A stretch of 64,000 bases of DNA from positions 1 through 64,000 of the forward strand of contig NIVC01001944.1 in the NCBI GenBank assembly GCA_002269645.1, in the 5' to 3' direction. The DNA comes from Macrostomum lignano (Eukaryota). Numbering within the stretch: position 1 is the stretch's first letter; each line of letters starts with the position of its first letter. The position numbers were made by a program, and so were the translations under genes. This document shows positions 1-49,720 of this stretch, in pieces. The notes below the pieces were generated by a model that saw only the letters and a program-made list of their open reading frames with translations, ran no database searches and was not told the origin of the DNA.

Positions 1-2358
1 TGTATTTGGGAGTGCTGTCTTTGGGTGGCGCTTGATCTCGCCACACTGATTTTGGGCGAGATTCTTACCAGCCCTCTGAGATCCGCCCTCTCTCCCCGGA
101 TTCACCCAGCAGCGCAAGCCGGTGGTGGGCAGCAGGAGGCCATCGGGCTGCAGAGGCCCCAAACCGGAGCCCCACAGAAGCTGCTGCTCTTCGGTGGCAG
201 AGGAATAGAATAGAATAGAATATAGAATAGAATAGAATAGAATAGAATAGAATAGAATAGAATAGAATAGAATAGAATAGAATAGACAATAGAATAGAAT
301 ATTCTTGGATACTGCACTGTCTAAGAAGAATTATTTATTCTTTTTTCTCTTTAGACTGTTATTTTTGGCTGCTAAGAAATTATTTTACCTCGCGTACTTC
401 AGCCGCACTACTAAGTAGTGCAAAAAGGATATGAAAGGTAGAATCGTGTTTTATGCGCATAGCGAATGACTTTGCGACTGTCAATACACATTACTGGACT
501 GGTCACCAGAGGAAATGTGCTATAGCAAATTATCTATGCAACAAACATACTGCGCGAGAACACACTGCCCTTCCATGGGGGCGCTGTATTTGGGAGTGCT
601 GTCTTTGGTGGCGCTTGATCTCGCCACACTGATTTTGGGCGAGATTCTTACCAGCCCTCTGAGATCCGCCCTCTCTCCCCGGATTCACCCAGCAGCGCAA
701 GCCGGTGGTGGGCAGCAGGAGGCCATCGGGCTGCAGAGGCCCCAAACCGGAGCCCCACAGAAGCTGCTGCTCTTCGGTGGCAGAGGAAATAGAATAGAAT
801 AGAATAGAATAGAATAGAATAGAATAGAATAGAATAGAATAGAATAGAATAGAATAGAATACAATAGAATAGAATATTCTTGGATACTGCACTGTCTAAG
901 AAGAATTATTTATTCTTTTTTCTCTTTAGACTGTTATTTTTGGCTGCTAAGAAATTATTTTACCTCGCGTACTTCAGCCGCACTACTAAGTAGTGCAAAA
1001 AGGATATGAAAGGTAGAATCGTGTTTTATGCGCATAGCGAATGACTTTGCGACTGTCAATACACATTACTGGACTGGTCACCAGAGGAAATGTGCTATAG
1101 CAAATTATCTATGCAACAAACATACTGCGCGAGAACACACTGCCCTTCCATGGGGGCGCTGTATTTGGGAGTGCTGTCTTTGGGTGGCGCTTGATCTCGC
1201 CACACTGATTTTGGGCGAGATTCTTACCAGCCCTCTGAGATCCGCCCTCTCTCCCCGGATTCACCCAGCAGCGCAAGCCGGTGGTGGGCAGCAGGAGGCC
1301 ATCGGGCTGCAGAGGCCCCAAACCGGAGCCCCACAGAAGCTGCTGCTCTTCGGTGGCAGAGGAATAGAATAGAATAGAATAGAATAGAATAGAATAGAAT
1401 AGAATAGAATAGAATAGAATAGAATAGAATACAATAGAATAGAATATTCTTGGATACTGCACTGTCTAAGAAGAATTATTTATTCTTTTTTCTCTTTAGA
1501 CTGTTATTTTTGGCTGCTAAGAAATTATTTTACCTCGCGTACTTCAGCCGCACTACTAAGTAGTGCAAAAAGGATATGAAAGGTAGAATCGTGTTTTATG
1601 CGCATAGCGAATGACTTTGCGACTGTCAATACACATTACTGGACTGGTCACCAGAGGAAATGTGCTATAGCAAATTATCTATGCAACAAACATACTGCGC
1701 GAGAACACACTGCCCTTCCATGGGGGCGCTGTATTTGGGAGTGCTGTCTTTGGGTGGCGCTTGATCTCGCCACACTGATTTTGGGCGAGATTCTTACCAG
1801 CCCTCTGAGATCCGCCCTCTCTCCCCGGACTCACCCAGCAGCGCAAGCCGGTGGTGGGCAGCAGGAGGCCATCGGGCTGCAGAGGCCCCAAACCGGAGCC
1901 CCACAGAAGCTGCTGCTCTTCGGTGGCAGAGGAATAGAATAGAATAGAATAGAATAGAATAGAATAGAATAGAATAGAATAGAATAGAATAGAATAGAAT
2001 AGAATAGAATACAATAGAATAGAATATTCTTGGATACTGCACTGTCTAAGAAGAATTATTTATTCTTTTTTCTCTTTAGACTGTTATTTTTGGCTGCTAA
2101 GAAATTATTTTACCTCGCGTACTTCAGCCGCACTACTAAGTAGTGCAAAAAGGATATGAAAGGTAGAATCGTGTTTTATGCGCATAGCGAATGACTTTGC
2201 GACTGTCAATACACATTACTGGACTGGTCACCAGAGGAAATGTGCTATAGCAAATTATCTATGCAACAAACATACTGCGCGAGAACACACTGCCCTTCCA
2301 TGGGGGCGCTGTATTTGGGAGTGCTGTCTTTGGGTGGCGCTTGATCTCGCCACACTGA
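1..2358. repeat. Tandem array of a ~570-580 bp unit (about 4 copies plus partials), each containing an (AGAAT)n microsatellite
   Basis: The anchor ACTGCACTGTCTAAG recurs at 311, 886, 1456 and 2036. The spacing (575, 570, 580) varies mainly with (AGAAT)n length. The array breaks off mid-unit at 2358 and runs off the left edge of the window. Confidence 0.95.
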
Positions 2359-2656
2359 TCCATTGGCACTGGAGTTATCGCAGCTATTCTTAACAAAATA
2401 ACTCAGGTTGAAAGAGATCTTGCAGAGTGGATCGCGAATAATATATATTTGCTACTTTTCCTCTGCAGTGCTTGAGGCTCTAGCTTAATCAGCTTTCCAG
2501 ATATTCAATGGCGGAGATTCCGAAAAATTCTAATGTATTCAAATGGGGGAATTCGGGAAAATCAATCAGGAATTGCCAAGCTGTAGTAATAAACTCAGAT
2601 TTGAGATTCTACAGATCATTAGAGCGTGCCAGTCGGTGTCTTCCGCAGAATGAAGG

Positions 2657-2897
2657 TTCTTGGGTCAGGATAGGAGATTCTTGGGTGAGGCTATTCTTGG
2701 GTCAGCATGGAAGATTCTTGGGTCAGGATAGGAGATTCTTGGGTGAGGCTATTCTTGGGTCAGCATGGAAGATTATTGGGTCAGGATAGGAGATTCTTGG
2801 GTGAGGCTATTCTTGGGTCAGCATGGAAGATTCTTGGGTCAGGATAGGAGATTCTTGGGTGAGGCTATTCTTGGGTCAGCATGGAAGATTCTTGGGT
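2657..2897. repeat. 58-bp tandem repeat, about 4 copies
   Basis: GGTCAGGATAGGAGATTCTTGGGTGAGGCTATTCTTGGGTCAGCATGGAAGAT recurs at 2663, 2721 and 2779, then about 2837. Confidence 0.9.
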
Positions 2898-3828
2898 ACT
2901 GACACTTCGATGACATGTTTTATCAGTTTGAAGAATACCTTGCACGGCTTTAGACTCAGTTTTCGAGCTGGTATCTAAGCACAGTCTCATTCAAGCTGTA
3001 GTTAAGCCAGTATTATCTTCACTTCAGCAGCGCATACAACTTATCCGATTTCAGTGGCGTCCTGGTTCATTTTGCCCCTACTGAGCGGTGGAATCTCCAT
3101 TGCCCTGTTCTACTTTATCCAGGTCTTCATCCTTATACTAAGGTGATTATGTAAAGCTTTAAAAATGTTTACTTTTAATTTGTGATTGTGTGCACAAGCG
3201 CGCACTAGCAGAGGCGCACACTGGCAGAGGCGCGCACCGGCACAAGAGCGCAGCAGCACAAGAGCGCACTGGCAGAGGCGCGCACTTTTGACACGCTGTA
3301 GCATAAGCGCGCTGTCTGTCTGTCTGTCTGTCAGACGGCATGTCTGAGAGAAACCCTACAAACTGAAACACACAGGGAAGGCAGAAACAAGTATTTGCAG
3401 AATGCGAGTAAAAACAGACGCCAGCCTATAAATTGGTCCATAAAATATTTCTTTATATTGTTTGTCACAGATAAGACGCCCAAGCTAATTACAAAAAAAC
3501 AGCCGCAAAAAAGATTAAGCTGAAAATTGTCTGCCCAACCAAATTTAAAAACTGTTAAAAGACCAACAATTAAAGTAATAAAGTTGAAGAGAAAAAATAC
3601 AATAGTAGGCACTATCTACTGCTATAGGTAAAATTAAACGAGGCACTGATAAGAAAACGATAAAAAATATTTTACGAGCGTACTACCAAAGCGAGAGAAA
3701 AGTGAGGGATGGAAAAATAACAGATAAAATTGAAAAAGTCCATAAACAGACCGACACCGCAGATAATAGTTAAACAGCTACAACTAGCTACTTAAGGACA
3801 GTAGTGCAAGCGCATGCTAGTGCAGTTT

Positions 3829-5322
3829 TTAAATAATCGACGAATTCAGCCGGAAATTCGGCTCCGAGTTCAGCTGCTGGTGACCAGACAGTGTGGCGTC
3901 GAATTCGCCCTCGTAATCTTCGTCATCGTTATCCACTTTGACATCAAGATCGAGGTCGTCCTCGGATTTCGGATCGGCGGAGGCCTGCAGGTTAGGGGTG
4001 GCGACCGAGTTTTTGAAAGGCCATTTGAGGACAGGGAGATGATGATAAATGAGGTCATTCAAGGATGAGGAAATATATGCCATGAAAGGTCGATATTTAG
4101 GGACACGGACAGGGGTCATGTAGGACAAGACAAGGGGTTATTTAGGGACATGAGTATTGGTCATTTAAGGTCACAAACATCATGACGGTATCACATGTTT
4201 AGTTGCACGCATATAAAGTGGTGAGTCATACATTAACATGGGTTGATAAAATTTCCCAGCTCACCGATCGATTATAGCCTAGCCGGGAGTCGGTCTCGCC
4301 GTCTCGACTATCGTCGTTGCCCCCAGCCAGCGATGCGGCTAAACAAGCGGCCACATCGAAGGCGGTTGTAGCGGCAGCAGCGTTAGCAGCAGTCCTACTA
4401 CCCATAGTATTGCTGCCTAACACAGCAGCGCCGGTAGTATTCGCCAGTGGCAAATAAATTTTTCTAGCCACCACCGTCTGCTTCTGCTGCTGCTGCTGGC
4501 TGTCAGAGCCGGTCGCTCCCGATGCCGGGTATCGCCGACGGCCGGAACGGGCGCGCAGCTGCGGCTCCCCTGCACTCAGGCGTCTCTGCGCGAGAGATAA
4601 GAATAGGAAAGGGGTCAAATGAGGACAATAATTCTAAGCAGAGGTCATTTCAGGACAAAAATCAACCCTGGGGTCAGTTGAGGACAAAAGTCTACCCAGG
4701 GGTCATTTGAGGACAGAATCTATCTGGAGGTCATTTGAGGACAAACTAATATACGTAAAGATCATTTGAGGGCAAACATCTACCGTGGGGTCATTGAAGA
4801 CAGAGGTTATTTGGGGCAAAAAAAGTGCGCAGGGGTCAACTGTCCTTACCTGGCCAACAGTTGTGACGGCGGCGGCGGAGGCGGCGCACCACCCCGTCGG
4901 AACAAGGCGGCAGCGTCAGCGCCTTTGACAGTCGCCGATTGGCCCGCCTGGGTCGGCCGCCGAGATCGCCAAGACTGGGCGACATGGACGACGCCTGCTC
5001 CGTCGAAGACTGCTGCGGCAGAGTTGTTGTTAAAGAGTCGGTGGCCATCGACGCGGCAGCGGCGACGGCGGCTGCGGCCGTGGCGTCGAGTAGAGGCTGG
5101 TCCAAGACAACGGCTGCCGACAGCTGCTGGCGAGAGCAGACGGCTCGACTCGAAGGCTCTGCTGGCAGGCGCGGCAACAGCGGCGCCGAATGATGAAGCG
5201 CAGTTTAGCCGAACGATCGCGCTCCGCAAGGACCTGCAATTGCAGCTGCATGCGAAGATTGGTCAGGTCCATCTGGAGGTCGTCCACACGATGCAGGCGT
5301 TTCTCGTAGTGCTGCCGAATCT
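3829..5322 (-). CDS. 3' exons of a DLK/LZK (MAP3K12/13)-like kinase gene: leucine zipper plus low-complexity tail; no kinase exons seen
   Basis: Exons at about 5322-4850, 4585-4265 and 3984-3829 (TAA), with AG/GT boundaries. The first exon reads EIRQHYEKRLHRVDDLQMDLTNLRMQLQLQ, which resembles the DLK zipper [29 protein letters not shown]. The frame is broken later in that exon (indel or assembly error). The exon 2 to exon 3 phase is consistent. Confidence 0.6.
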
Positions 5323-5675
5323 CTGGGGCGAAAGAAATGACAAGAGACTGTTAGGCGGCAAACAAGGACACAGGACTTCTAGAGGTTAAAGGACACAAAA
5401 GGTCTCTTAGAGGTCGAATGAGAACACAGAACTATAAGGGTAAAATGAGGACACAGGACTGTTAGGGGTCAAATGAGGACACGGGACTGTTGAGGGTCAA
5501 TTGAGGACACGGAGCTGTTATGGGTCAAACTAGGACACGCGGGGACTGTTGTTGTGATAAGTTTTTGCATCATGTAGCAAACAGACCATGGCACATTTGC
5601 ACTAATGCACCATATCTAGACCAGCAGTATCTGAAATAGAAGCAAAAGCCATTTATAAGATAATATACATGTAGG

Positions 5676-5967
5676 TCAGTGAAGCAAATATCTAAAATTG
5701 TTAACAGAAGTATAAAAGAAAAATGAACAAGAAAAAATGGTGCTCAGTTAGCCGATTCTAAAAGTGAATCGTGGATCCCCTGAGCCACGAAGAGGCCGAA
5801 CACCGTTCAGGGGGTTAATCCATAGTTCACTTTGCAGAGCAAAACAAATTCCACAGCACAGTAAACAGTGCACAGCGGTCTTTTGCAGCATTGAACTAAG
5901 GATCAATCCCGCCACTAAGAGCGGGAAGCCACAGCAAGAAATGCAAAGCGGCCAGCTTTTTGAAAGC
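5676..5967. repeat. 292-bp direct repeat, copy A, just downstream of the ZnF-SET stop codon
   Basis: TCAGTGAAGC...TTTTTGAAAGC matches 9655-9946 with no difference seen by eye; offset 3979 bp. Confidence 0.95.
5739..5813 (-). ncRNA. Putative HDV/CPEB3-like self-cleaving ribozyme fold, copy A
   Basis: Minus strand: P1 CCCCUGA/UCAGGGG; P2 GGUGUUCG/UGAGCACC; P3 GCC/GGC; L3 UCUUCGU; P1.1 U-A plus C.U; P4 CGAUUC/GAAUCG; J4/2 CUAAC with the catalytic-C equivalent at 5751. Atypical feature: +1 is C paired to G rather than a purine. Confidence 0.7.
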
Positions 5968-6035
5968 CGATAAAATCTTATAGCGAACTCCCCATGCAAC
6001 GGGGGCTGATGGTTTCAGAGAATAAACTTAGCCTT

Positions 6036-7996
6036 TCAGTCTTTAAGCCACGGATGCAGTCGAAGCACATCCGAGCGCCTTTCTCCATAATCGTAGAGTA
6101 GCTCCTCGCCTCGAGCAATGTCTCGAATGGCTTGGAAGACCAGATGCGGTTTATTGTTTACATCAGCAACAATCGGCTTCAAGTTATTTCTTCGCCGGCT
6201 ATGGTTAATGTACCGACCGACGTACTGGAAAGTGTTGGTTGCGTCGATGCAATAAGCTTGATCTCGCCAGGAAAAGAAAAACAAGAAGCAGCATGGCTTC
6301 CCTTGCTTTACAATATCTTCCTCCCGGGCGAGGCGTGCTTTTTGTCCTTGGATTAATTCTCCACCGTAAGTACAGACGACAGTGCCTTTTGGGAGGTCCG
6401 TACGGGCAAATGCCCCCAGACCCTCTGCGTCGACGCTACCGGCCTGAACCACGACGTTGCCGGTAGAAATCATTGTCTGTCGAACCACATCGGCCATAGT
6501 GAGTTGCCTCATAGACGCCATTTCGGTCGGCAGGGATCGCTCTGGACTCCCACGGCTAGCTCGGCCGTGAGGCGTCACGTGAAGGAGCGGCGTGCATGCT
6601 CCGTCCGGAGTTGTGATAGTGTCCGGGACTAGACGCTCGCGATTAGCTGCCATTGCAGGAGGGGCAACCGCAGCAGCGTGGCTATTTGAGTCCTCAGGCG
6701 AAGTCACAGTCGGCTCGAAAGGCGGATCATTGGACAGGCCATCTTTATTGGCTTCTCCTCTTTGGAGCCGAACGCTAAGGGGAACCTGACAGTGAAGAAA
6801 ATGAAGAGGACAAATGATTCATAGTGGTAACGGCATACAAATGCAGATTAACCCCAACGCTTTAATCTTTGCATTGAATAAACATGCAACAAAATTGTTC
6901 CTAAGAACACTGTTTCACACAATAAACTGTGGACTTCATTTAGTTTGACCAACTTACTTCATTGGAGGTCGCCGGTACAGCGTCGGTAGATAAGGCGACG
7001 TCTATAGTTGCAGCAGCGGCAGACTCCGGGACCAGAAGCTCGCGATTAGCTGCCATTGCAGGAGGGGCAACCGCAGCAGCGTGGCTATTTGAGTCCTCAG
7101 GCGAAGTCACAGTCGGCTCGAAAGGCGGATCATTGGACAGGCCATCTTTATTGGCTTCTCCTCTTTGGAGCCGAACGCTAAGGGGAACCTGACAGTGAAG
7201 AAAAAAGTACATCATAATGGTTACAACATGCAATTAAAGATGAACGTAACCCTTTGTTATTTTCATTAAACATACATGCAACCCAGCTGATGGTAAGATA
7301 ATTGCTCTACACCATAAACCATGGACCAGCATAAAAGACCCACCCCTTGTTGTTAATCCCTAATATTTCCTTTTGAGCAAAGTATCTAAAAGCTTTTATT
7401 TATTCATTTTTCACTTTCATCTTCTCAAATTTACCAAACATTCAACTTTTTAAGAAAAGTTGCGACCTGACCTGACCCGCGACCTGATGCTTTCAAGGTT
7501 ACAGGCCGCAGCGTTTTAACAACAAAAAACCATGGACACAAATTTTAGTTTAACACACCTCATTGGAGGTCGCCATTTCAGCGTCGGTAGCTAAGTCCGC
7601 GTCCATTGTTATAGCGGCGGCAGATTCCGGCAGGCTTTCAAGCGGCAAGGCTGGATTAAGATTTAGTTGAGGCCGGATGCCGTAAAAGGCCAACAACCGC
7701 AGGCCCTCAATTCTGTCATATGCCCTTGCCCTCGCATCAGCTACGGCTGCACGGCCGACAACAAATGCTTCGCCGAAATGGCACAGCCGCATGTGTTGTC
7801 TCATATTAGAGGCGGCAAATGAGCTGCACAGCTGGCAAAGCTTTAAATCTCTTTTGCCATGCCAACGTTTGTAGAGAATGTAGGCTTCGACTCGATCGTA
7901 GTTTGCTGTATGCTTGCTTCGAGCGTGTCGAAGGAGGGTGGCGGACCGATTGGTGGAATAGTCACACATCGGGCAAATAAACTGGTCAGGGTCCAT
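6036..7996 (-). CDS. C2H2 zinc-finger / SETD8 (PR-Set7, KMT5A)-type SET-domain fusion protein, about 472 aa, 3 exons
   Basis: Exons 7996-7559, 7188-6958 and 6785-6036, all phase 0 with GT-AG boundaries. Zinc fingers: CPMCDYSTNRSATLLRHARSKH and CQLCSSFAASNMRQHMRLCH. SET motifs: GLGAFA, VCTYGG, YCIDAT, GRYINHS, GEELLYDYG and a terminal HPWLKD, matching the SETD8 C-terminus GEELLYDYG...HPWLKH. Confidence 0.85.
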
Positions 7997-8358
7997 ATTG
8001 AATTGATTCAAGTTTTCAACGTAAACGTTTAGAGTAAAATTTAGTTCTCGATAAAACGTGTCGCGCAAACTTTCTGAAAATGAGGAAAAATCAAAATGAA
8101 ACCTTTAACTACGGTGAAAGATGAATGAACTAGGCATCTTGGTAATAGGTACTTTACAATGCACTCTTAAAGACTGTCAGACTGAAAGCAAAGAAGGCAT
8201 GTTCCGCTCGCTCGTAGTCTCAGGACAATAATAAAAGGCAGCTGAACAGATCAAATCAAATGTTTATTTGAAAGGTTGGGCGATACAACGGACTTGATAA
8301 CGCATTACAGTCCCGAATTTCTGCATAGTAGCATTAGGTTGCCAGTCACACTGAAGTT

Positions 8359-8976
8359 TTAAAGCAAATCGAGTAGTGAAACGGAATTCGAAATTGTAGG
8401 ATTTGCATTTTGTTGCAACGAAACGCTGGGAGAAGCTGGATTAAAAAAGCCATTGAAATCATTGTCTAACGTAGTTACACTACAACTGTGGCAGGGGCAT
8501 GTACAATGGCTATCAGGGCAATTGAAAATGTTTGAACGTAAAACACTTGGACCGGAGAGCTGTGAATCGGCACACTTTTCGGAGGGGTTCCTGGCGGCTA
8601 GTGATTGCAGCTTAGAAATTAAAACTTCAGCGTTTTCTTTAGCCTCGTCTAAGTTATAGGTAGATTGCGAATTTCCATTTGTCTTAGATTGCTTTCCATG
8701 TTTTACCCTAACATGGCTTGGTAAATTCGAAGTGATAACACTGCAAACAGGACACTGATAGAGGTAACCCGATTCGGTTCGCTTCTTTGCCTTTAAAAGT
8801 CCAAAAAGGCGGATTGTGGCATCAATTTGCTCTTCAGTGGCATCAGGGTGCTTTCGATTGCAATGTACCTTGAAACCAGATGCGCGTCCTGTCCAAGCAT
8901 TGCAGATCAAACAGGAAATCTGCGTATGAACCTGCACCATGTGAGACATTGTCCCGCGGGTGACATTCAAGAGCAT
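8359..8976 (-). CDS. C2H2 zinc-finger protein (5' exons not resolved)
   Basis: CLICNAWTGRASGFKVHCNRKH and CPVCSVITSNLPSHVRVKH. A minus-strand AATAAA about 90 nt after the stop suggests a separate gene. Confidence 0.65.
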   Translation of the reverse strand: MLLNVTRGTMSHMVQVHTQISCLICNAWTGRASGFKVHCNRKHPDATEEQIDATIRLFGLLKAKKRTESGYLYQCPVCSVITSNLPSHVRVKHGKQSKTNGNSQSTYNLDEAKENAEVLISKLQSLAARNPSEKCADSQLSGPSVLRSNIFNCPDSHCTCPCHSCSVTTLDNDFNGFFNPASPSVSLQQNANPTISNSVSLLDLL

Positions 8977-9654
8977 CGGGAAAACGTTGTGGGCTTATTA
9001 TTATACTGCTTCCAGGGAGGTTAGGCAAATTAAGTCTTAATTTTTGTATTCTAAGACAATGACGGAGAGGAAATGCTTTAGAGTATAAAAAATTCTGAAT
9101 CTCACATCTGAATCTCCTATCCTCTGATCGGAACCAGGTCTATCTTCCAACATGAACATCCTTTCCTCTCAACTGAAACCCTCGAGTCCGAGTCAATAAG
9201 GCTACAGGCCAAGCAGGGTGCCATTAGTTAGTGTGGGCAGTTACATTTTCAATCTCCCCAGCCAAGCCTAAAGTGCTGCTATAAATGGGATAATGAGTGC
9301 ATGGCGGGATGGGTCACTGCTATTGCTTATGGTTAACACGTAACAAAAGTAAAAGACAAAAATGTGTATATCACGATTACTAGTTCCACTTTTATTATAC
9401 TTTCGCGCTATCTTTGAAGCAGTATGCAAATATACTATTGGCATAGCGGGCGTCTAAACGCAGGCTAACATAAGAGAACTGACAAATTGCAGTGAGTGTC
9501 AAAGTGTAGTACAACGAAAAGGGACAAAAGTAAGACGCATATGCGCCTCTCGCTGCAACGACAGGCGACTGCATATAAATGCATGAAATATTAAGTAATA
9601 CAAACGAGAGAATAAAACACATTCAAGAAAGTTGCTCGTAGTTATAAATTTCAA

Positions 9655-9946
9655 TCAGTGAAGCAAATATCTAAAATTGTTAACAGAAGTATAAAAGAAA
9701 AATGAACAAGAAAAAATGGTGCTCAGTTAGCCGATTCTAAAAGTGAATCGTGGATCCCCTGAGCCACGAAGAGGCCGAACACCGTTCAGGGGGTTAATCC
9801 ATAGTTCACTTTGCAGAGCAAAACAAATTCCACAGCACAGTAAACAGTGCACAGCGGTCTTTTGCAGCATTGAACTAAGGATCAATCCCGCCACTAAGAG
9901 CGGGAAGCCACAGCAAGAAATGCAAAGCGGCCAGCTTTTTGAAAGC
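9655..9946. repeat. 292-bp direct repeat, copy B, downstream of the KDZ transposase stop codon
   Basis: Matches 5676-5967. Confidence 0.95.
9718..9792 (-). ncRNA. Putative HDV/CPEB3-like self-cleaving ribozyme fold, copy B
   Basis: Same sequence and fold as 5739-5813. Confidence 0.7.
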
Positions 9947-10109
9947 TGAAATACTGCTTACTTTGGTAGGCTGTAAACTTTACAGTAAATTTCTAAGAGA
10001 AATCGGTATACGTTTATAAACTGGTTTAGAATTTCATGTAAACAAGCTAGTTTACATCCGAAATATGATTATCCTATGGATAACAGTTTCAAGTAATCGA
10101 GTTTCGGAA

Positions 10110-12900
10110 TTAAATACTATCAATCCATTCTTCATCTGACTCAGACTGCTCACGACTTGATTCAACGTCTGAATGACTCGGGGCTTCAACGTCATCTGGC
10201 TGATTTACGTTGGTACCAGCGTCGTTTGGATGCTGCGCATCAGCAGCAGCAGCTTCAATGCTTGCGTCAATGTGATCAAAGCGAAGAGCTTGAAGTTGCT
10301 TTAAAATAGTCTGAAAGAGGCATCGAAACTGGGCTGGCAATCCAGGTTGATGATGGAGTGTTTCACAGTGCTGTTCAAGTTTAATTTGAACGTCACGCCA
10401 CTCTTGCACAATAATGATCTTTTCCTCCGCTAGACGATTCAGCTTGTGATACAAGTCAACCACCCGTCGCTTGAACCTCTCAGACACATCGATCGAAAGA
10501 CCGAAGTAGAAGTCTGACTGGAAGTCGCGAAGCTGAATCATAGTGGGCACGCGAAGGCCTGGCGGAAGCGAGCGGGCGGCCATTCGAATGTCTGCATTTA
10601 AAGCCGCAACCTTGCGTAGACATGCTCGATTTTCTTTTTGTCCATCTGAGCAGCCACTCTGACGGATCCAATAGAATCGTTCCAAAGCAAGTGCCTTAAG
10701 CTTTGCGTAAGGTTCCCTGCTCAATGGAGAGTCGCTATTGGGATTTATGGCTTCTGCATGCCATTGTTGAGCAAGATTTAAAATGGCTACCTCAGAGATT
10801 CCGGCAGGAATAGTTAATTTGTTGTTCCGCATCAAATCGCCAGCTTGTAGAAGCAATTGCTCCATTTCAGCTGAACAAGACGCGGCTGTGCGAGTTATTA
10901 GTTTTAATCGAGCAGAAAACCAATTGGAGGCGTACAACAACTGATTAGCATTGAAGCAATGCAAAATGTAAGACATACAAGCACTTCTGCGATCGGACCG
11001 CATGTACTTTAAGCTTTTACCAAACGGTCGTAGTGCAGACCAAGCGCGCTCCGTATTCTCCCCGTCGCAAAGACCCGCTCCAGGAGTTACCCGCACGGAG
11101 TACTTTAGTTGGCATTGTCTCTCGTGGCCCAGCACATGAAAGGCGTTCACAGCGCACGTGACACTGTTAAGCTGTACACCAGATGCTGACACCATGGACT
11201 TGACACGATTGGAAATGCGACAACCTGATTTTAGGAAAAAGTTTTTAAATGAATAAATAATTGAGCTTCGTGTCGCAGTACGCATGCACGTACATAAGTA
11301 AGCACAAGCATAAGTAAGCACACACTATAAGTGTATAGTGTAAATAAGTGCAGCATGATAGAAACACGATAAAAATCAACTCACCAACATCATAGATAAA
11401 AATGAGATCCTTTGAGACGGGCTGTGTCATTAGGTAATGACGAAGAGTCTGTTCTGGATAGCACAGGCCCTCACCAGCTGTAATAATGTTGCAACCTGTC
11501 AGAAGCCTGTTATGCCGGCAAAATAAGCCAAAGAAACCGTTGACATCGTGCTTGCTGGCCCTGATCACGGGTTTTTCTGTTCCAGCCTTCCAGTTAGTGC
11601 AGCCTTCTGCAGACACTTGTGTCGTAGGAGGCGGTACAGTTGCTGGTTCTACATGAATAAGCGGTGACGGCAATGAGCGTTCAGAATCTGGCACTAGACG
11701 TTGCTTCGAACCCATACTTTGTAGTCTTCGCCATCCAAATAGAGCATCAGCACAAACTACAGACTTCCGACTTGAATTTTGGTCAGGACACAAAAGACAA
11801 CTAGCAGGCCAGCTTGCTGAACACCTCTGCAACTCTCGAAACCGCAGTAGGACTCCATTACGCTGCAATCTCTGATACACTCGATCGGCTAAACCAGGGT
11901 TCCAGCGACCTTGTCCTACGACGGAGCCTTTGAAAAGACAGGTAATTGCACGAGACAGTGGCAGTTGACCGTCAAAGCACAAGGAGTCAAGAGTTGATAG
12001 AAAGCTAATTGAAAAAAATGTTAACAATTCGCCAACGCGTGACTCGCTTCCAGGAAAGTATCCTTTTGCTAGCATGGCATCAACTTTATCACAGGATTGG
12101 CACGTATAAATTCTGGCGCAAACAATTCCGTTGATGTCAATAATCTGAATTTCGGATGATGTTGTATACTCAGAAGACAAGCTTGATTCGCTACAGCAGA
12201 ATAGAGAGACAGGCTCTTCTTCTTGAATGTCTTCAAACATTAGCGATTGAGCCTAGGAAAAAGGGTTAAATTTTGTATGCGGTGTTATAAAAATATTATT
12301 CCGTACTAAGGCTATTAGCATTCTAAATACTTTTGTTTCACGTCAAATTTAATACAGCGTTATACTGCCAAATAGGCGTCATTGTTTTCTTCACAGTAAA
12401 CTAATATCCTTAGAAATTGCAATTTAGATTTTAAAACAACTTACATTCCACTGGAGGAACTTGTGAGCAGCAAAATTTCCATGCGTTATCTTTTTACAAT
12501 CACTGCAGACATCGTACTGACAATGAACACATCGGAAAACTCCAGGCTGCATGTCGCAACGAACACAGCATTTTAACTCGAATGACTGTTTATAACCGGC
12601 AGTGTAACTTTCCACAATGGCCGTGTAGTCTTCCCATTCCGTGAATTTAGGCGGCTGTTCAAACTTATTACTAATCTGTTCAGGCATAGAGTCATGGTTT
12701 CCTGCACCCAGATCTTGTGAAAGACTGCCGCCAGTGACTGTGGAACACGAGGAAGCCGTGGCAATCGATGTAGTACTTTCCAATGCATTAGGCGCATTAG
12801 ACGTTCGCAATATCCTTGGCCTTCCGCGTTGGCCAGTCATCAGTACTACTTCAGATTGTCTTTTTCTCGATTTCGCATTTAGTTTTCTTGACGAAATCAT
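10110..12900 (-). CDS. KDZ (Kyakuja-Dileera-Zisupton) transposase with N-terminal CxC cysteine clusters, about 812 aa, 3 exons, intact
   Basis: Exons 12900-12445, 12252-11385 and 11224-10110 total 2439 nt with an open frame across the GT-AG junctions (FLQWN|AQSLM and YDVG|CRIS). Motifs: CVRC...RCVHC...CSDC...H...H, CLLC, CADALF, FCRH, GEGLCYP, IYDVGC, AFHVLGHERQCQLKY, GAGLCDGENTERAWS. Confidence 0.88.
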
Positions 12901-14236
12901 TGCTGAAATTCGTGAGGATCATTCTGAATTGTATATTACATCATATGCTAAGCTCAAAAGGTGTTTATCTATATCAGTGTCTTTTTAGAGCAGGTGCTTA
13001 GCCATCTGCTCAGCCACCTGCAAGGCAACCTGCTCAGGCATTGCAGCTCAGGCAGTGGCTGGCTTGGAGCATCAGCTGATTTGATTAAAGTTGATTAAAA
13101 TCTAGCAGATTTATAGTCTATAATTTGTTATCCATAGCCATATTGCATTGAGTTGTGTTTATAAGTATATAATAAGCAGCTTAAATTATTATTTGGTGTA
13201 ATTGGGATGCTTTGGAATATGTTTTCTAAATTTTCCACTTCATCTTGTATTCTTGATTGTTGTATTTTCTTACAAGTCTTTTCTGGGTCCTTATGTCTAT
13301 GAAAAAGGGTAGGCCTACCTGCATATAGTGGCTCTTTGATTTTAATTTATAAATTTTAGATGTATACATTTTTTGTTTTAATAGTTGCAGTTTAATGAGC
13401 CACAACACAAATGCCCACAAAGTTTTTATCAGTTTTATTTTATTTGGAATATTCCAATAAATTATAATATATAAATATATATTATTTATCCTAACAAAAA
13501 GAATTCTATATGAATATTATATTTACATATTTATAGTCACAGAATCATGCACTGAAAAAGTTCTTCTTAGGCTTGATAACAATATAGAAACATATAGAAA
13601 CTAATAGATAAAAGTCTTAAATAACATTTATCATTTTTGATATTCTGTTTTTTAATTTGACTAAGAACATCTAAAGAAATCATACTTTTTTATTAGAATA
13701 TTTAAACTTATTTAAAGGCAACAAAGGTACAAAAGAATAGGCAGCCTTATGGTCATAACATTATGGTTTTAACTTTTTTCTGTCAATTCACTAACTTTGA
13801 ATTACCAATAGATTAAAAATTTAATAGATTATATGGCCATTAATGTTTATATCTAATTATGCAAATACTATAATTTTATCTATAGTTTGTTTCAATCTTC
13901 CAAAGCTTTTTATTTGTTTTCAAAAGGTACACAAAGTTAATGATGTCTTTTGCTTAAAAAAATGTTCAATTTTTTATAAAAATAGCTTTTTGCCAACTGA
14001 TATTATACTAATCCAACATTTTACCATTCATTTTTGGCATTTGTTATTTGTCCAATGACTGGACAAATAGCCTTTTTGCTATTTGTCTGCTTAAATTGCT
14101 AACACAAGTATCTGTTTGTTTTATGATGAATATTCTAAATTTTTAAGACCTTTTCTTGTATATTAATTAATATTTTCTTATATACTGTTAGCAAAGCAAT
14201 GTATTCAATTTGGCATAATTTTGTATATAAGACACA

Positions 14237-14388
14237 CTAGTTCCCAGTGAGCTCCGCGAAACCCACAAACCCAAGGACACGCGCGAAGCGCGTGTCCTTG
14301 GGTTTGTGGGGTGAGCGGAGCGAACGCGCGAGGCACAAAGTGCCGAGCATGAGGAACAAACAGCCAGCCAATGCGCGAAGCGCATTGG
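14237..14388 (-). mobile_element. Helitron-like 3' terminus with GCGAAGC-capped hairpins
   Basis: A perfect 23-bp stem (14262-14284/14288-14310) with a GAA loop and a second 9-bp stem (14368-14388). The minus strand then ends CTAG|T at 14237/14236. The 5' end was not found. Confidence 0.5.
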
Positions 14389-16578
14389 GTGGTCTGGCTT
14401 GTGACGAATATAATAATATGAGACGTGTGCATCGAAAAAATGACAAGAAAAATCTCACAAAAACTGCTGTAACTTCAAAACTACAAGTGCGAATTTCACA
14501 AGTGAGGTGTCATTTTAAAGAGAAGAATCTGATCTATTTAACGAGTATAGTTTTGTATGGATTCACTGCGGAGAAAAGGAACAGGCTTCAGTTGAAATGT
14601 TTGTCTTAAGATTATGTCTTTACAAAAGTGCATTTCCTCATGCACATTAAAACTCGAGCTAAAAATGTTCGAGGGTTATAGGTGCGCCTTACTAAGATGC
14701 ATAACATTATTGGGTTGTTTTTTTCAATTGTATCAAAAAGTTGGCACTTTGGTTGCAAAAAATGCAAAAATTGAAAATGTACTTTTACAGTTTTTTGCAT
14801 TTTTTTCTATACTGCTAATAGTTAAGCATACATACTATGCACCAATTGATGCGCAATTCAAAGATACACAAGTGTGGAAGTTTTCAATTCCTAAACATTT
14901 GAAATCAGAAAGTTATCGACGAAAGACTAAAAATCATGATCTCAAACTGATTTGAGGAAAAGTGCTCATTATAATTTTTGGAATATGGAAGAAACAATTC
15001 AACGCCGTCATCTAATTCCAAACTAACTGTACTTTAAGGTACTGCGATGATTTTTTTATTGAAAGAGCGAAACCTGTTTAAATATTTGAAAAAATGGAAA
15101 AAAAGTACCTTTTTTCATAGAAATACACTCTTTTGACTGCTTAATCCGATTTCCAACAACAAAATAGTTGCTTTCCTGCTGGTGCAAACCGTTATTAGGG
15201 TGAATTTTCAAAATTGCATACTGTGCCAAAAGTAAACTGAAGCTTAATATTTATAAACATTAGAAACGGGACCACTAATGGGTATTTTACTTTGGTTACT
15301 TACTATGGACTAAACTGGCACTGGCAGAGACAGATTTGAGAGAAACTAATTGCTCCATTGTATTTGTATTTGGCTCCAGCGTTACAAATTACAATAGCTA
15401 TTTCGGGGTCTAACCGGCTAAGTTATCAAAAAAGCTAGATACCAATCACCAGTTTCATCATCAGCTATACCTACCACGATTTTATAGTCACATGCAACAG
15501 TAATACCCTCCTTTAAAAGTTTTCAATATCTAAAATGATGTGTTAAATTTTATAAAATTTCATAAACAGTGAAATTTTAGCTGTTTACGTGCTGGTGGTT
15601 TGAACGTAGCTACTTTGTGCGAAAATACACTGTCATTAATACCGTACCTATTATTGTATTTATTGTATTGAAAGTTGATGTGTAAATTGTACTTTTCTAT
15701 TTTTTTGTCATTCGTTATCGCACTCGGGCCGGCCTGCCTGCCTTGTGGGGTGTGGTGGCCTTGGCCACTTTCTCCCCCTTCTGCTAGGATCCAAAGCAAG
15801 CTTTCAAGTGTACATTTAATATTATCGATCGATTATTTAAAACAAGCCTCTAGTGGCTGGTGTTGAGAGTGAGTGGCCTTGAGTGTACGCGAAAGCAAGA
15901 GGAAGCCCATGGGCGGACTATATGAACCTTCCTTTAGTGGAAAGTTGGGCCTTGTGCATTGGATAGTGTACGCTACACAAGACAGAAGGTAAAGAGAAAG
16001 AGAACGACAGGCTAGCCAATAGCGATAGCATGTGCTTCTTTCTCTCCAGTCCACTATGGTAGGGGGGGGGAGGGGGGTGTCATACGGCCCAACTCTAACC
16101 CCCATACCCAAAACAGCGTACATGTAGAATAAGAAGGGATTGGGTCCAGATAAGTCTTCCCAAATGTACATGTATGTACAAAGACAAACACAGACAAGAA
16201 AAATGGCTCTAAAAACCATTGTTATTGTTACACTGTGTGTCTATTTTTATTAACTTGACTTTGACTTGTCTTTAGGCCCTACTCTAGCATGGTCAAGGAT
16301 AATTACTGTTACTTCATACCTAATTTACAATTAATTGCATAAGATTAAGAAGGAATAATACAATCGAGGTCGAACCCATGATCACTTGACCCACCCACCC
16401 ATGATCACTTCTGATTCTGACCTACATGTATCTACTATATCCTGCCAGTTTCTCCAGTTTTATGGGTCTTGGTGTCGGTGATTCGAGCAATTCCATTACA
16501 TTTTATCGGTGCAGTGCGTCTATTAATGCTTAGCTACTTGTATATGTGTTGCAGAACTTATGCTCGTAGTTTCCCTTC

Positions 16579-17358
16579 TAGGGATGTTGACCCCGGGAGT
16601 GCTCCCCGGGGAGCTTGTCGGGGAATACTCTCCGGGGAATTTAACCGGGGACCCTGGGGAGAAAAAATATGAAAAAATGCATTTGTAACTTAATTTTTGC
16701 CATTAAAATAAGAAACTGATTCACAGAAAGCTGATTGAAACTCTGTCTATGCTCTTTTACCGCATAATTGCTTATTTCAATGCATTACATGTATTTGAAA
16801 CACAACACACGTTTGATTGTTTTTTCACTAATAAGTCATTCAATCAAGCAAATTGCACGTAGAAAAGAAACCCGTCAGGAAAAAGAAGCCTTACTGACTA
16901 GTGACTGCTGTGTTGGTCTGCGTTGACGGCTTGACGCAGGCGCAGCGCTGCGTCATGCGTCAGGCACTGACGCATAGGGGGGTGTCATACATATACTCCC
17001 TATTAGACAAGGACAAAATGGTGATTTACATATATATGCAAGAAATAAAATTCCGATTATAAAAACAGTCTCATTCATTAATTATCCTCTCACGAGCGTA
17101 GCTGTTTAGCATGCATTCCAACAAATGCACTTTTCCGATAAAGGTGCGCGCACGATTTCGTGATGCCACATTGTCAAATACAGTTTAAAAAAACATTGTT
17201 TAAAATTTTTACCCCTGCGCCTTGAACATGTAGTACAAAGCTTAAATCAAAGTTTAAAAAATTCCACTTACAATCTAAGTGATCCGCCGTTTTAACTTAT
17301 TTTTTCTTTTCACCGGGGTCCCCGATAAGATAATTCCCTGGGGAATCGACATCCCTAA
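16579..17358. mobile_element. hAT-type MITE
   Basis: TIRs TAGGGATGTTGA / TCGACATCCCTA. 8-bp TSD TTCCCTTC at 16571-16578 and 17359-17366, with one extra A at the right end. Confidence 0.8.
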
Positions 17359-19074
17359 TTCCCTTCCTATAAATCATTTGACGTTAGAGACATTTTACAA
17401 CTCTCGCCCTACTTTATCTATTAGGCTAACTTTATGTATGACACGACGCAAAATATTAGGAGCATCAGCGTTAATAATGCCTTGAAAGTCTTTAAATAAT
17501 CGATACAACACTAGGTATTATAAAATTCCAACCCCAAAGCTCACTGGGGCGAAAAGACTTTGTCTTCATTAACTAGTATAACAACATAATAAACTAATAA
17601 TCAAGATACAAATAAGAAGTCTTTAAAGTCTAGGAATATTTATCCTTGTAGTTTCTATGAAATAGATTTTTTAGCATTATTAATTTAATTGGACAAATGA
17701 CAAAATGTCTATTTGTCCAGTATTAACTAGATGAATAAGAAAGCATGGTCATAATCCAGTAACTGGACAAATGACAATTGCCTTTATTTTTAGATTGTAT
17801 GCTAGTATAGGCTTATATTATACATAAAGAACATTTGGCAGAAAAATTAGCTAGCAAGGCAATGGTGAGCAAAATATTGACTTTTTACTATTTTCCAAAT
17901 ATGTCTATCTTATCTGGCTGGAATGAGCCACCTGACATAGGCCCTACTCACTATATATTCCACTCTTGACTCCAAGGTGCATATAGGAAAAAGATTATTT
18001 AAGTGTAAGGTGTGCGATGAAAAATACAAAGTGGGACTGTAGCCTAAGAGCAATGCTGTTACCTAGCTATTTAAGAAGTAGTACTTCAACCAACCTGCTG
18101 TCTAGCAACAAATGAGATCTACTGTCACTGACATATGACAAGCATATCTAAGATGCTTAAAGTTTAAAAAAATTCTTAATACTCTGGTCACAGTTGCTGT
18201 GTCACTGTCACAGATTCATCAGTTAATTCATCACAAATAAGCCCTCAAATCTCTAGAAGGTATTCATTTGAAGTAGCCAGGATCACCATATTATTTTTTG
18301 TTATTGGCCCTTGCTCTATGCACTGCCTACAAACTTGAAGGTCTATATTATATTATTACACAATCTAAATATACTAAATCTCTAAGGTTTGTTTGTATGC
18401 TTGAATGAATGTCCATAATGCTCTAGTTGTATAACTAAATCATGCAAATATATATCTAGATTTGAAAGGCCTTCTCGTCTCAATTTCAGCACAAAAAGTG
18501 ACAGGAATCAGGTCGATAGGTCATTCGCAAGTCAGTTTCATCACATACTACTATTGTATCAATATTTACACAAACTACACGTCACAATTTACACAATGAT
18601 GTATGACAAAAAATTACATATATTACAAACTACACGTCACAATTTACACAAATATTTACACAATAATTAATATATTACAAAAAAGCTATGCGATTAGCGA
18701 ATACGTGGCTACACACACATCAGCCATAGCTTTTATGATAGCTAGAAGAAAAAATTATTGCCGATGTAACGCATCAGCTATGGTAAACAAAGAAACACTA
18801 GGAGAACTAATGACGCAGCGCGAGAAAAATCTGTTTTAGATTTGCGGCTGTTAGTTTGTTCACATAAGATAGGCATATTAAGTGTTTTAGTAAAATAAAA
18901 TGCAAATACAATAAATAAACGTATTTTTTTCTCCTAAAACAGAACCCACCGATCGCATCAGTTTTTTTTATCAATAAATTATTACATTTGTTATACTACA
19001 GATAAATTTCCGGTGGTCTAAGCCAAGTGTAATAACTAGCGCAACGATCCCTAAATCATCGCTTGTGACGCTTG

Positions 19075-44265: not shown

Positions 44266-44301
<36 letters not shown>

Positions 44302-44344
44302 TAGTGTCTGTCTGTCTGTCTGTCTTAGTGTCTGTCTGTCTGTG

Positions 44345-44423
<79 letters not shown>

Positions 44424-49583: not shown

Positions 49584-49654
<71 letters not shown>

Positions 49655-49683: not shown

Positions 49684-49720
<37 letters not shown>

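What the first reader, a model, noticed from the sequence alone, without database searches (positions are those of the whole stretch)
5814..9792. Two same-sense ribozyme folds bracket a 3,979-nt cargo unit: retrozyme-like or circular-RNA architecture inside a DNA transposon
The 292-bp direct repeats flank exactly the ZnF and ZnF-SET genes. A read-through transcript from the transposase gene would be cut at 9793/9792 and 5814/5813. That would release a monomer with 5'-OH and 2',3'-cyclic phosphate ends, the substrate RtcB-type ligases circularise. Retrozymes and HDV use this layout, but I know of no case in a KDZ element or with chromatin-modifier cargo. The repeats could also let the cargo be excised or amplified by DNA recombination. 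Caveat: the SET gene has spliceosomal introns and the ZnF gene has its own AATAAA, which fit ordinary Pol II genes.
Basis: inference. Interest (0 to 1): 0.8.

Follow-up and report, generated by a model that had tools for sequence, protein, structure and literature searches.

The report
Paired HDV-like ribozymes bracketing transposon cargo
Two identical 292-bp repeats inside a KDZ DNA transposon each carry a convincing HDV-type self-cleaving RNA fold and bracket two zinc-finger/SET genes, but the layout looks like a recent DNA duplication that cuts gene transcripts rather than a proven circular-RNA or retrozyme system.

Summary
Windows 5676-5967 and 9655-9946 are 100% identical 292-bp direct repeats with sharp ends, 3,979 bp apart. 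On the minus strand, which is the sense strand of all the genes, each holds a 75-nt HDV-like double-pseudoknot fold (5813->5739 and 9792->9718). Rfam scores it below threshold (21 bits against a cut-off of 44). Three other results support it. It has a perfect unmodelled P2 helix. A core-plus-helices descriptor gave 0 hits in 3,000 shuffled windows. A relative in a metagenome contig keeps the fold through three compensatory P2 pairs and a different P4.

The repeats bracket a ZnF gene and a three-exon ZnF-SET (KMT5A-like) gene, downstream of an intact KDZ transposase gene.

The retrozyme/circular-RNA reading is only geometrically supported. I found no target-site duplication, PBS/PPT, RT partner, multimers or further copies. 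The cargo keeps its introns, and the unit holds 7 AAUAAA hexamers. There are 12 upstream AUGs before the first ORF.

My best reading (about 0.4) is a recently duplicated, strongly folded self-cleaving module. It sits 69 or 164 nt after the SET and KDZ stop codons, and neither gene has a canonical poly(A) signal before the ribozyme. It would cut sense transcripts at gene boundaries. A circle is a possible minor by-product (about 0.12). I classify it as a new variant of a known kind, of moderate interest.

The parts
5676..5967 (-). Repeat copy L (292 bp). It starts 69 nt after the ZnF-SET stop codon.
   Evidence: Exact identity to 9655-9946. As RNA the minus strand folds at -88.4 kcal/mol, z=-4.3.
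9655..9946 (-). Repeat copy R (292 bp). It starts 164 nt after the KDZ stop codon.
   Evidence: It sits inside a 13-nt palindrome, ATTTCA-A-TGAAAT (+ strand 9648-9654 and 9947-9952), read.
5739..5813 (-). HDV-like ribozyme L. P1 5813-5807/5783-5777; P2 5804-5798/5745-5739; P3 5796-5794/5786-5784; L3 5793-5787 (UCUUCGU); P4 5771-5766/5758-5753; J4/2 GCUAACU with the putative catalytic C at 5751. Predicted cut at 5814/5813.
9718..9792 (-). HDV-like ribozyme R, identical to L. Putative catalytic C at 9730. Predicted cut at 9793/9792.
5814..5967 (-). Segment 'A': 154 nt just 5' of the cut. Four hairpins fill it, and the last ends 1 nt before the cut site. The same sequence is at 9793-9946.
   Evidence: MFE -59.6 kcal/mol against -38.5 for shuffles, z=-5.7, 0 of 200 shuffles as good.
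5676..5738 (-). U-rich 63-nt tail 3' of the ribozyme (same sequence at 9655-9717). It begins with U6.
   Evidence: Sequence; T runs listed.
5814..9792 (-). Inter-ribozyme unit: 3,979 nt unspliced, about 3,437 nt if both SET introns are removed.
   Evidence: Spacing; introns from the sequence.
8359..8976 (-). ZnF gene, a single ORF of 205 aa with two C2H2-like fingers. Its own AATAAA is at 8268-8263.
   Evidence: No Pfam hit.
6036..7996 (-). ZnF-SET gene. Inferred exons 7996-7559, 7188-6958 and 6785-6036 (GT-AG, all phase 0). The N-terminus has C2H2 fingers and the C-terminus a KMT5A/SETD8-like SET domain.
   Evidence: Pfam SET 3.3e-20. PDB KMT5A 6e-27. Splice sites read. No transcript evidence.
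10110..12900 (-). KDZ transposase gene with at least 3 exons and open reading frames throughout. B-box-like N-terminus, CxC1, and a KDZ domain split over two exons.
   Evidence: Pfam PF18758 1.2e-18 and 6.7e-8; sequence.

Best explanation
A 292-bp structured RNA module has been duplicated recently at the DNA level inside a multi-gene KDZ transposon. The module is a 154-nt hairpin-rich segment, then a 75-nt HDV-like self-cleaving ribozyme, then a U-rich tail. One copy now follows the transposase ORF and the other follows the ZnF-SET ORF, both on the sense strand.

When Pol II reads past either stop codon, the ribozyme folds and cuts the transcript about 320 nt (KDZ) or 223 nt (SET) after the stop. 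The upstream RNA then ends in a 2',3'-cyclic phosphate behind a tightly folded 3' segment. Everything downstream is detached, uncapped, with a 5'-OH.

The module therefore works as a transcript-boundary device for the element's genes. It forms or limits 3' ends and insulates the next gene and the flank from read-through. The ribozyme-to-ribozyme 3,979-nt RNA, and any RtcB-made circle of it, would be at most a minor by-product.

Shown here: the repeats, the fold and its comparative support, their position relative to the ORFs, the missing poly(A) hexamers, and the structure of segment A. Inferred: transcription across the module, self-cleavage, and the fate of the products.
For: - The fold is real in silico.
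- Its unusual features are a C at +1 and a P1.1 that can only be U:A plus C:U. Both match what is reported for the fast-cleaving C. briggsae HDV-like ribozyme (PMC13635239). This match is by analogy; I did not see that sequence.
- Both copies sit directly 3' of stop codons on the sense strand, at 164 and 69 nt.
- On that strand there is no AATAAA or ATTAAA between the KDZ stop and its ribozyme. There is also none from the SET stop down to position 4000. The one gene without the module (ZnF) has AATAAA 91 nt after its stop.
- Segment A folds far better than shuffles, and its last hairpin ends 1 nt before the cut.
- A DNA-level origin fits the 100% identity, the sharp ends and unrelated flanks, and the absence of TSD, PBS or PPT. 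It also fits the introns kept in the cargo and copy R sitting in the centre of a 13-nt palindrome.
- The unit is a poor RNA product: 7 AAUAAA hexamers and 12 upstream AUGs.
Against: - There is no RNA data at all, and cleavage is untested. The Rfam score is below threshold.
- Ribozyme-made, non-polyadenylated mRNA 3' ends are usually unstable, and I know of no natural precedent in a DNA transposon.
- Absence of the AAUAAA hexamer is weak evidence, because many animal genes use variants. TATAAA lies at 10018 and 5657.
- With two copies from one duplication, the position after two ORFs counts as at most about one and a half observations.
- The plus strand of the repeat also folds well (z=-3.8), so the structure of segment A does not by itself prove an RNA role on the minus strand.
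Confidence: 0.4

Rival explanations
1. Passenger relic. The module is a fragment of a ribozyme-bearing retroelement, for example the tail-to-head junction of tandem non-LTR or SINE-like units: structured 3' UTR, then 5' HDV-like ribozyme. The transposon picked it up and then copied it once by a local DNA repair event. It may still cleave but has no role for the element.
For: - In eukaryotes, HDV-like ribozymes are overwhelmingly retrotransposon 5' ends, and promoter-less elements are co-transcribed from neighbours (PMC6765202; PMC7761336; PMC3774820).
- The only relative found sits in a 108-nt tandem array in non-coding DNA.
- Structured 3' UTR plus ribozyme 5' end would explain both halves of the module.
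- The window is rich in transposable elements, with a non-LTR RT at 24.9-27.3 kb and a Ty3/gypsy element at 33.9-40.1 kb.
Against: - No RT, poly(A) tail, TSD or further copy of the module is in the 64 kb.
- The module shares nothing with the non-LTR element in the window.
- Retrotransposon copies share sequence downstream of the ribozyme and differ upstream. Here only 63 nt downstream is shared, and 154 nt upstream is shared as well.
- The placement after two stop codons would be coincidence.
Confidence: 0.28
2. Read-through transcripts are cut at both ribozymes and the 3,979-nt (or spliced, about 3.4-kb) monomer is circularised by an RtcB-type ligase. This gives a protein-coding circular RNA that is stable, translated, or reverse-transcribed to move or amplify the cargo. 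It would be an HDV-type retrozyme.
For: - Two same-sense ribozymes in direct repeats are the exact geometry of LTR retrozymes (PMC4918200 and PMC7761336).
- The cleavage ends are RtcB substrates.
- A-B-U-A-B equals 1.07 units, which is what more than one round of copying a circle would give.
- The relative in L001 is also a partial multimer of 1.9 units.
Against: - No TSD, PBS, PPT or RT partner.
- Introns are retained in the DNA copy, and there are 7 AAUAAA hexamers inside the unit.
- The ZnF gene looks like an ordinary Pol II gene with its own poly(A) signal.
- The unit is 4-20 times longer than known retrozyme circles, and nothing holds the two ends together in the predicted fold.
- No RNA evidence.
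Confidence: 0.12
3. The repeats matter as DNA. 292 bp of perfect homology lets the cargo loop out, or a cargo circle integrate, by homologous recombination (Campbell-type). The ribozyme is incidental.
For: A circle of U+AB recombining with a chromosomal AB gives exactly AB-U-AB, with sharp ends where the homology stops. The identity is perfect.
Against: Any direct repeat has this property, so nothing specific points to it. This model does not explain why the repeated piece is a structured ribozyme module placed after ORFs. It is not exclusive of the other models.
Confidence: 0.1
4. Artefact. The duplication is an assembly error, such as a repeat node threaded twice, or the fold is inactive.
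For: Exact identity with sharp ends is also what a mis-threaded repeat node looks like. The Rfam score is below threshold.
Against: The cargo is flanked by the repeat on both sides in any threading of the graph. The chance of the fold arising is below 1 in 3,000 windows, and it has a covarying relative.
Confidence: 0.08

Closest known systems
HDV-like self-cleaving ribozymes (HDV, CPEB3, drz-type; Rfam RF00094, RF00622, RF02682)
   Same: Nested double pseudoknot with P1 (7 bp), P2, P3 (3 bp), L3 UCUUCGU, P4, and J4/2 GCUAA holding the candidate catalytic C. Cleavage is predicted 5' of P1. The size is about 75 nt. C at +1 and a U:A + C:U P1.1 are as reported for the C. briggsae ribozyme.
   Different: It scores 21 bits against a 44-bit cut-off on the closest Rfam model. 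Activity is untested. The genomic setting differs from all described ones: 3' of ORFs in a DNA transposon, duplicated.
Non-LTR retrotransposons with a 5' HDV-like ribozyme (R2, RTE, baggins, L1Tc)
   Same: The ribozyme sits downstream of another transcription unit and would release the downstream RNA from a co-transcript.
   Different: There is no RT or endonuclease ORF downstream. The shared sequence extends 154 nt upstream of the cut and only 63 nt past the ribozyme. No TSD or 3' tail. 12 upstream AUGs precede the next ORF.
Retrozymes (plant LTR type; animal non-LTR type)
   Same: Direct repeats each carrying a same-sense self-cleaving ribozyme, so a unit-length RNA with ligatable ends is possible.
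   Different: Retrozymes use hammerhead ribozymes, not HDV-type. They have non-coding interiors of 0.2-1 kb, TSD + PBS + PPT (LTR type) or long tandem arrays (animal type), and many copies. None of these is seen here.
DNA transposons carrying epigenetic-modifier genes (KDZ/Plavaka with TET/JBP in fungi; HarbingerS and MuDR with SET in oomycetes)
   Same: A transposase gene with neighbouring chromatin or epigenetic genes on one element (PMC12730594).
   Different: Here a KDZ transposase pairs with a KMT5A-like SET plus C2H2 fingers. That combination is not described in the papers I searched. The element ends (TIR, TSD) were not found. No ribozyme is reported in any of the known elements.
3'-UTR ribozymes in mRNAs (mammalian Clec2 hammerhead)
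   Same: A self-cleaving RNA placed after the stop codon of a Pol II gene, which would detach the 3' end.
   Different: A different ribozyme class. The Clec2 case is a host gene, with no duplication and no transposon.

Membership tests
HDV-like ribozyme | P1 helix of about 7 bp whose 3' strand directly follows P3/L3 | tested here: met
   CCCCUGA/UCAGGGG, 7 of 7 pairs. In L001 A-U becomes G-U.
HDV-like ribozyme | P2 pseudoknot closing the fold (J1/2 side with the 3' end) | tested here: met
   GGUGUUC/GAGCACC, 7 bp. Three pairs changed on both sides in L001. 0 of 3,000 shuffles meet the whole descriptor.
HDV-like ribozyme | 3-bp P3 with a 7-nt L3 of consensus type, including the U/G pair positions | tested here: met
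   GCC-UCUUCGU-GGC matches the RF02682 consensus CC-UCUaCGU-GG.
HDV-like ribozyme | Two-pair P1.1 | tested here: inconclusive
   Only U23:A38 plus C22:U39 is possible. The same composition is reported for the active C. briggsae ribozyme, but it is not a canonical G:C pair.
HDV-like ribozyme | Catalytic cytosine in J4/2 | tested here: met
   The C of GGCUAAC at 5751/9730, in the same motif as the Rfam consensus and L001.
HDV-like ribozyme | Reaches the Rfam gathering score | tested here: not met
   21 bits against 44. Not listed at gathering or in the whole-window E<=10 scan.
HDV-like ribozyme | Self-cleavage to 5'-OH and 2',3'-cyclic phosphate | not testable with these tools
   Needs an in vitro transcription and cleavage assay.
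Retrozyme (LTR type) | Hammerhead ribozyme in each LTR | tested here: not met
   No hammerhead hit. The motif is HDV-type.
Retrozyme (LTR type) | 4-bp TSD, PBS after the 5' LTR, PPT before the 3' LTR | tested here: not met
   The flanks CATGTAGG / TGAAATAC share no duplication. There is no tRNA-complementary or polypurine tract at 9654 or 5968.
Retrozyme (LTR type) | Short non-coding interior; circular RNA accumulates | tested here: not met
   The interior is 3,687 bp with two intact genes and introns. Circular RNA is not testable here.
Retrozyme (animal non-LTR type) | Tandem arrays of 170-400-nt units | tested here: not met
   1.07 units of 3,979 bp and no array.
Non-LTR retrotransposon with 5' ribozyme | Ribozyme at the element's 5' end, followed by an RT-encoding ORF; upstream sequence differs between copies | tested here: not met
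   No RT in 5968-9654. The upstream 154 nt is identical in both copies.
KDZ (Kyakuja-Dileera-Zisupton) DNA transposon | KDZ transposase domain | tested here: met
   PF18758 at 1.2e-18 and 6.7e-8 on two exons, plus a weak CxC1 hit.
KDZ (Kyakuja-Dileera-Zisupton) DNA transposon | Terminal inverted repeats and 8-bp TSD (Zisupton) | tested here: inconclusive
   No convincing inverted repeats in 2500-18000. The 28-nt subterminal-like repeats occur in one orientation only. The element's ends are undefined, so 'inside the transposon' is an inference.
Deltavirus-like circular RNA agents | RNA-only replicon with ribozymes in both polarities and a delta antigen | tested here: not met
   It is DNA-encoded, both ribozymes are on one strand, and there is no delta-antigen-like ORF.

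The most novel reading that the evidence does not exclude
The unit is a genome-encoded, protein-coding RNA of 3.4-4 kb that is excised by paired HDV-type ribozymes and circularised. That would be the first HDV-ribozyme counterpart of retrozymes. It would also be a living example of the step proposed for the origin of delta-like agents, in which a cellular coding RNA acquires HDV ribozymes from mobile elements (PMC7761336). Here it would be carried and spread by a DNA transposon.
Probability: 0.12. Interest if true: 0.9.

Novelty: new variant of a known kind. Interest (0 to 1): 0.55.

Why it matters
HDV-like ribozymes in eukaryotes are known almost only as 5' processing devices of non-LTR retrotransposons, plus one conserved mammalian intron. 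Here a well-formed one is built into a cut-and-paste (KDZ) transposon. It is placed after ORFs and duplicated around a histone-methyltransferase cargo.

If it cleaves, it would show that DNA transposons also use self-cleaving RNA to shape their transcripts. If the circle model holds, it would show that coding RNA circles with HDV-type ribozymes can be made from DNA. That bears on where delta-like agents came from.

It also adds a KDZ + ZnF + KMT5A-like SET combination to the list of transposons that carry chromatin modifiers. Finally, it reveals a small ribozyme lineage shared with an unrelated environmental eukaryote, where it forms 108-nt tandem units.

Tried and rejected
- Rfam at gathering on the whole window: nothing. 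Whole-window E<=10 scan: the HDV hit is not listed and there is no hammerhead, twister or other ribozyme.
- My first loose structural descriptor matched many minisatellites and was useless. I replaced it with the strict one.
- Looking for the same genome or close relatives by protein failed. The exact ZnF protein is not on record. The SET ORF finds only about 35%-identical, mostly unnamed 160-aa SET proteins; the one named hit is bacterial. The KDZ ORF finds nothing. A census of family copies was therefore impossible.
- A degenerate ribozyme pattern found nothing in viral contigs or in bacterial/archaeal genomes.
- The covariance model built from the window and L001 found no third or diverged copy in the window.
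- L001 shares only the 24-nt ribozyme core with the window. It has no KDZ, ZnF or SET similarity and no ORF of 120 aa or more.
- I looked for LTR hallmarks (TG..CA, PBS, PPT, TSD), SINE A/B boxes, Helitron termini, MITE TIRs and per-copy TSDs by reading. None fits.
- Residual similarity beyond the 292 bp, which would indicate an old repeat homogenised by gene conversion, is absent.
- Transposon TIRs were not found.
- The bacterial promoter/terminator scan was uninformative for a eukaryote.
- The idea that the ribozyme acts as an IRES-like leader for ZnF is rejected: the leader is 816 nt with 12 AUGs.

Full report
**1. What is in the sequence**

A single two-copy direct repeat with 3,979-bp spacing was found in 4000-12000. 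The alignment and a direct string comparison show that 5676-5967 and 9655-9946 are identical over exactly 292 bp. The bases on either side differ (G/A at 5675/9654, C/T at 5968/9947). Local alignments of 60, 200 and 400 bp of flank on each side score no better than shuffled sequence. The repeat therefore has sharp ends and is not the core of an older, longer repeat.

Nothing else in the 64 kb resembles the repeat, the segment between the copies, or the KDZ region.

**2. The ribozyme fold**

Rfam gives no match at gathering thresholds. With E-value reporting on 5400-10200, the model RF02682 (HDV ribozyme of F. prausnitzii) aligns over its full length (1-74) to the minus strand at 5813->5740 and 9792->9719. 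The score is 21 bits, E=1.2, against a cut-off of 44. The conserved core letters match: CC-UCU(N)CGU-GG and CGGCUAA. On the whole window the hit drops out of the E<=10 list, so Rfam alone does not establish it.

Three further lines of evidence do.

- The model cannot score the P2 pseudoknot. Read directly from the sequence, GGUGUUC (5804->5798) pairs with GAGCACC (5745->5739), just after GCUAACU, where P2 must be.
- A strict descriptor hits only the two repeat copies in the real window and nothing in 3,000 block-shuffled windows. The descriptor is the consensus core CCUCUNCGUGG, the third P3 pair, a 7-bp P1 next to it, GCUAA downstream, and a 6-bp P2. The core alone occurs 0.095 times per shuffle, and the core with P1 0.0013 times. 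The descriptor was partly shaped by the candidate, so this is an upper-bound style control, not a blind test.
- The 21-nt core found one metagenome contig (L001, Ga0157379_10014204). Its minus strand 266->195 has the same P3/L3/P1-3' strand. The parts that were not used as the query also conform. P1-5' pairs 7 of 7, with A-U replaced by G-U. P2 is GACGUC/GACGUC, with three pairs changed on both sides relative to the window. P4 is a different hairpin (CCUC-UUCG-GGGG). GCUAAC sits at the same distance from P2.

Counted on the alignment, 95.5% of cells pair, against 30-55% when partners are slid by 1-3 columns. With two sequences this is limited but points one way.

The nested part of the fold (P1, P3, P4) is also the minimum-energy structure of the window sequence.

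Two oddities are a C at +1 and a P1.1 that can only be U:A plus C:U. Both are described for the C. briggsae HDV-like ribozyme, which cleaves at about 9 per min (PMC13635239). R2 work states that the cut site is set by where the 7-nt P1 anneals (PMC3774820). I therefore accept the predicted cut at 5814/5813 and 9793/9792, give or take one nucleotide. Activity itself is untested.

**3. Surroundings**

All genes here are on the minus strand, the same strand as the ribozymes.

- Upstream is a KDZ transposase gene, 12900->10110. It has at least three exons with open frames, and the KDZ domain is split across two exons.
- Between the repeats lies a 205-aa ORF with two C2H2-like fingers, 8976->8359.
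- Also between the repeats is a gene whose first exon (7996->7559) has related fingers (BLASTP E=3e-5). Its last exon (6785->6036) is a SET domain (Pfam 3.3e-20), closest to KMT5A/SETD8 among solved structures (6e-27).
- A middle exon (7188->6958) is a mosaic duplicate of the other two. It is in phase, so it can be included or skipped.

The gene models rest on GT-AG sites and reading frames read, not on transcripts.

The transposon's ends could not be defined. 'Inside the transposon' is therefore an inference from gene order.

**4.

- Each repeat begins shortly after a stop codon on the sense strand: 164 nt after KDZ and 69 nt after SET.
- On that strand there is no AATAAA or ATTAAA between the KDZ stop and its ribozyme. 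The next AATAAA is at 9396, beyond the repeat. There is also none from the SET stop all the way to position 4000. The ZnF gene, which has no repeat behind it, has AATAAA 91 nt after its stop.
- The 154 nt of the repeat upstream of the cut folds into four hairpins at -59.6 kcal/mol, against -38.5 for shuffles (z=-5.7). The last hairpin ends one nucleotide before the cut.
- The whole repeat has z=-4.3. The plus strand also folds well (z=-3.8), as complementary strands do.
- Copy R lies in the middle of a 13-nt palindrome: ATTTCA-A | repeat | TGAAAT on the plus strand. Copy L has no such setting.

**5. Testing the retrozyme / circular-RNA reading**

The geometry is right. Two same-sense ribozymes in direct repeats would release a unit with 5'-OH and 2',3'-cyclic phosphate ends. 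The rest does not fit.

- There is no target-site duplication around the composite or around either copy.
- There is no primer-binding site or polypurine tract next to the repeats, no TG..CA ends, and no RT anywhere in the unit.
- The cargo keeps two introns, which a copy made from processed RNA would normally have lost.
- The unit contains seven AAUAAA hexamers on the transcribed strand. One of them is the likely ZnF poly(A) signal.
- The RNA that would start at the first ribozyme has 816 nt and 12 AUGs before the ZnF start. It is therefore not a plausible mRNA, and the ribozyme is not placed like the IRES-like leaders of R2 or L1Tc.
- Known retrozyme circles are 0.2-1 kb and non-coding.

None of this forbids a low level of circle formation. 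It does make it unlikely to be what the arrangement is for, or how it arose.

**6. Most likely explanation**

The exact identity, sharp ends, unrelated flanks and retained introns point to a recent DNA-level copy of a 292-bp patch. It may have been pasted at a break in the palindrome behind KDZ. The copy behind SET would then be the original, but the direction is not certain.

What was copied is a discrete, strongly folded self-cleaving module that now follows two ORFs lacking canonical poly(A) hexamers. I therefore propose that it acts on sense transcripts as a boundary. It would cut 223-320 nt after the stop, leave a structured 3' end on the upstream RNA, and disconnect the downstream RNA. 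I put this at about 0.4.

The main rival (about 0.28) is that the module is a passenger piece of a ribozyme-bearing retroelement with no role here. That fits the general biology of HDV-like ribozymes and the tandem 108-nt units in L001. The circle model gets about 0.12, a purely DNA-recombination role about 0.1, and artefact about 0.08. The DNA and RNA roles are not mutually exclusive.

**7. Comparison and novelty**

The RNA itself is a new member of the HDV-like class, with one defining test failed (the Rfam threshold) and one untestable here (cleavage).

It is not a retrozyme, not a non-LTR retrotransposon 5' end, and not a delta-like agent by their defining features (see the membership table).

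Transposons carrying chromatin or epigenetic genes are known: TET/JBP with KDZ in fungi, and SET with Harbinger/MuDR in oomycetes (PMC12730594). The cargo is therefore a new combination rather than a new idea.

No paper in the library connects KDZ/Zisupton with ribozymes. I found no description of HDV-type ribozymes in direct repeats around coding genes. I rate the arrangement a new variant of a known kind. Interest is moderate, and it would be high only if the circle or a transcript-boundary function is shown.

Noticed in passing
L001 138-343 (minus strand), contig Ga0157379_10014204: About 1.9 tandem units of 108 nt. Each is built around an HDV-like ribozyme related to the window's. The middle unit is intact (266->195), the upstream unit has lost P2/P3/L3, and the downstream unit stops after P3-5'. 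The surrounding 7 kb has no ORF of 120 aa or more. It looks like a small tandem ribozyme element of HDV type in an unknown eukaryote.
   Followed up: partly
window 6622-7630: The middle exon of the ZnF-SET gene (7188->6958) is a mosaic. Its 5' part is 99% identical to the start of the last exon (7025-7204 against 6622-6801). Its 3' part is about 80% identical to the end of exon 1 (6951-7029 against 7552-7630). It is in phase 0 on both sides, so it is a recent internal duplication that made a skippable exon.
   Followed up: partly
window 9648-9654 and 9947-9952: Repeat copy R is flanked by ATTTCA-A and TGAAAT, so it sits in the centre of a 13-nt palindrome between an A and a T, with no target duplication. 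Copy L has no such flanks. This may mark copy R as the derived, pasted-in copy.
   Followed up: partly
window 4098-4150, 4611-4802, 5346-5538: Arrays of a 28-29-nt unit (GGGGTCAAATGAGGACAC...), all in one orientation, just downstream (minus sense) of repeat copy L. No inverted counterpart exists elsewhere in the window. They may be subterminal transposase-binding repeats of the KDZ element, but there is no TIR to support that.
   Followed up: partly
window 8359-8976 and 7559-7996: The stand-alone ZnF protein and the N-terminus of the ZnF-SET protein are distant paralogues. Both have two C2H2-like fingers with the same spacing (BLASTP E=3e-5). The stand-alone protein has no Pfam hit.
   Followed up: partly
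window 24897-27300 (+): GC-rich (0.57-0.59) non-LTR-type reverse transcriptase split over two overlapping ORFs, followed by minisatellites at 27.7-28.6 kb. No ribozyme was found at or near it.
   Followed up: partly
window 33949-40115 (+): Apparently intact Ty3/gypsy-type element with gag-like ORF, protease, RT, RNase H and integrase. It has a weak cold-shock-domain hit at the start of pol and a 21-nt repeat inside the integrase C-terminus (39467-39697).
   Followed up: no
window 61932-63398 (+): ORF with an Endonuclease VII-like motif followed by a protein-primed type B DNA polymerase domain (DNA_pol_B_2). This may be part of a Polinton/Maverick-like or related element running off the window.
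   Followed up: no
window 1-2241: Four copies of a 570-580-bp tandem unit, each containing a (GAATA)n microsatellite.
   Followed up: no
window 19042-20500, 44200-53300, 56300-60470: Very dense minisatellites with periods of 8, 12, 14, 16-17, 20-24, 47, 49 and 159 bp. Some lie inside long ORFs that give low-complexity peptides. 44202-44481 and 49505-49740 carry the same 8-bp repeat.
   Followed up: no
window 14251-14321: A 34-bp near-perfect palindrome (91%) with a 3-nt spacer, in the AT-rich region upstream of the KDZ gene.
   Followed up: no
window 54398-55096 (-) and 47910-49298 (+): A CoA-transferase (OXCT-like) exon and a G-patch domain ORF. These are probably host genes among the repeats.
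   Followed up: no
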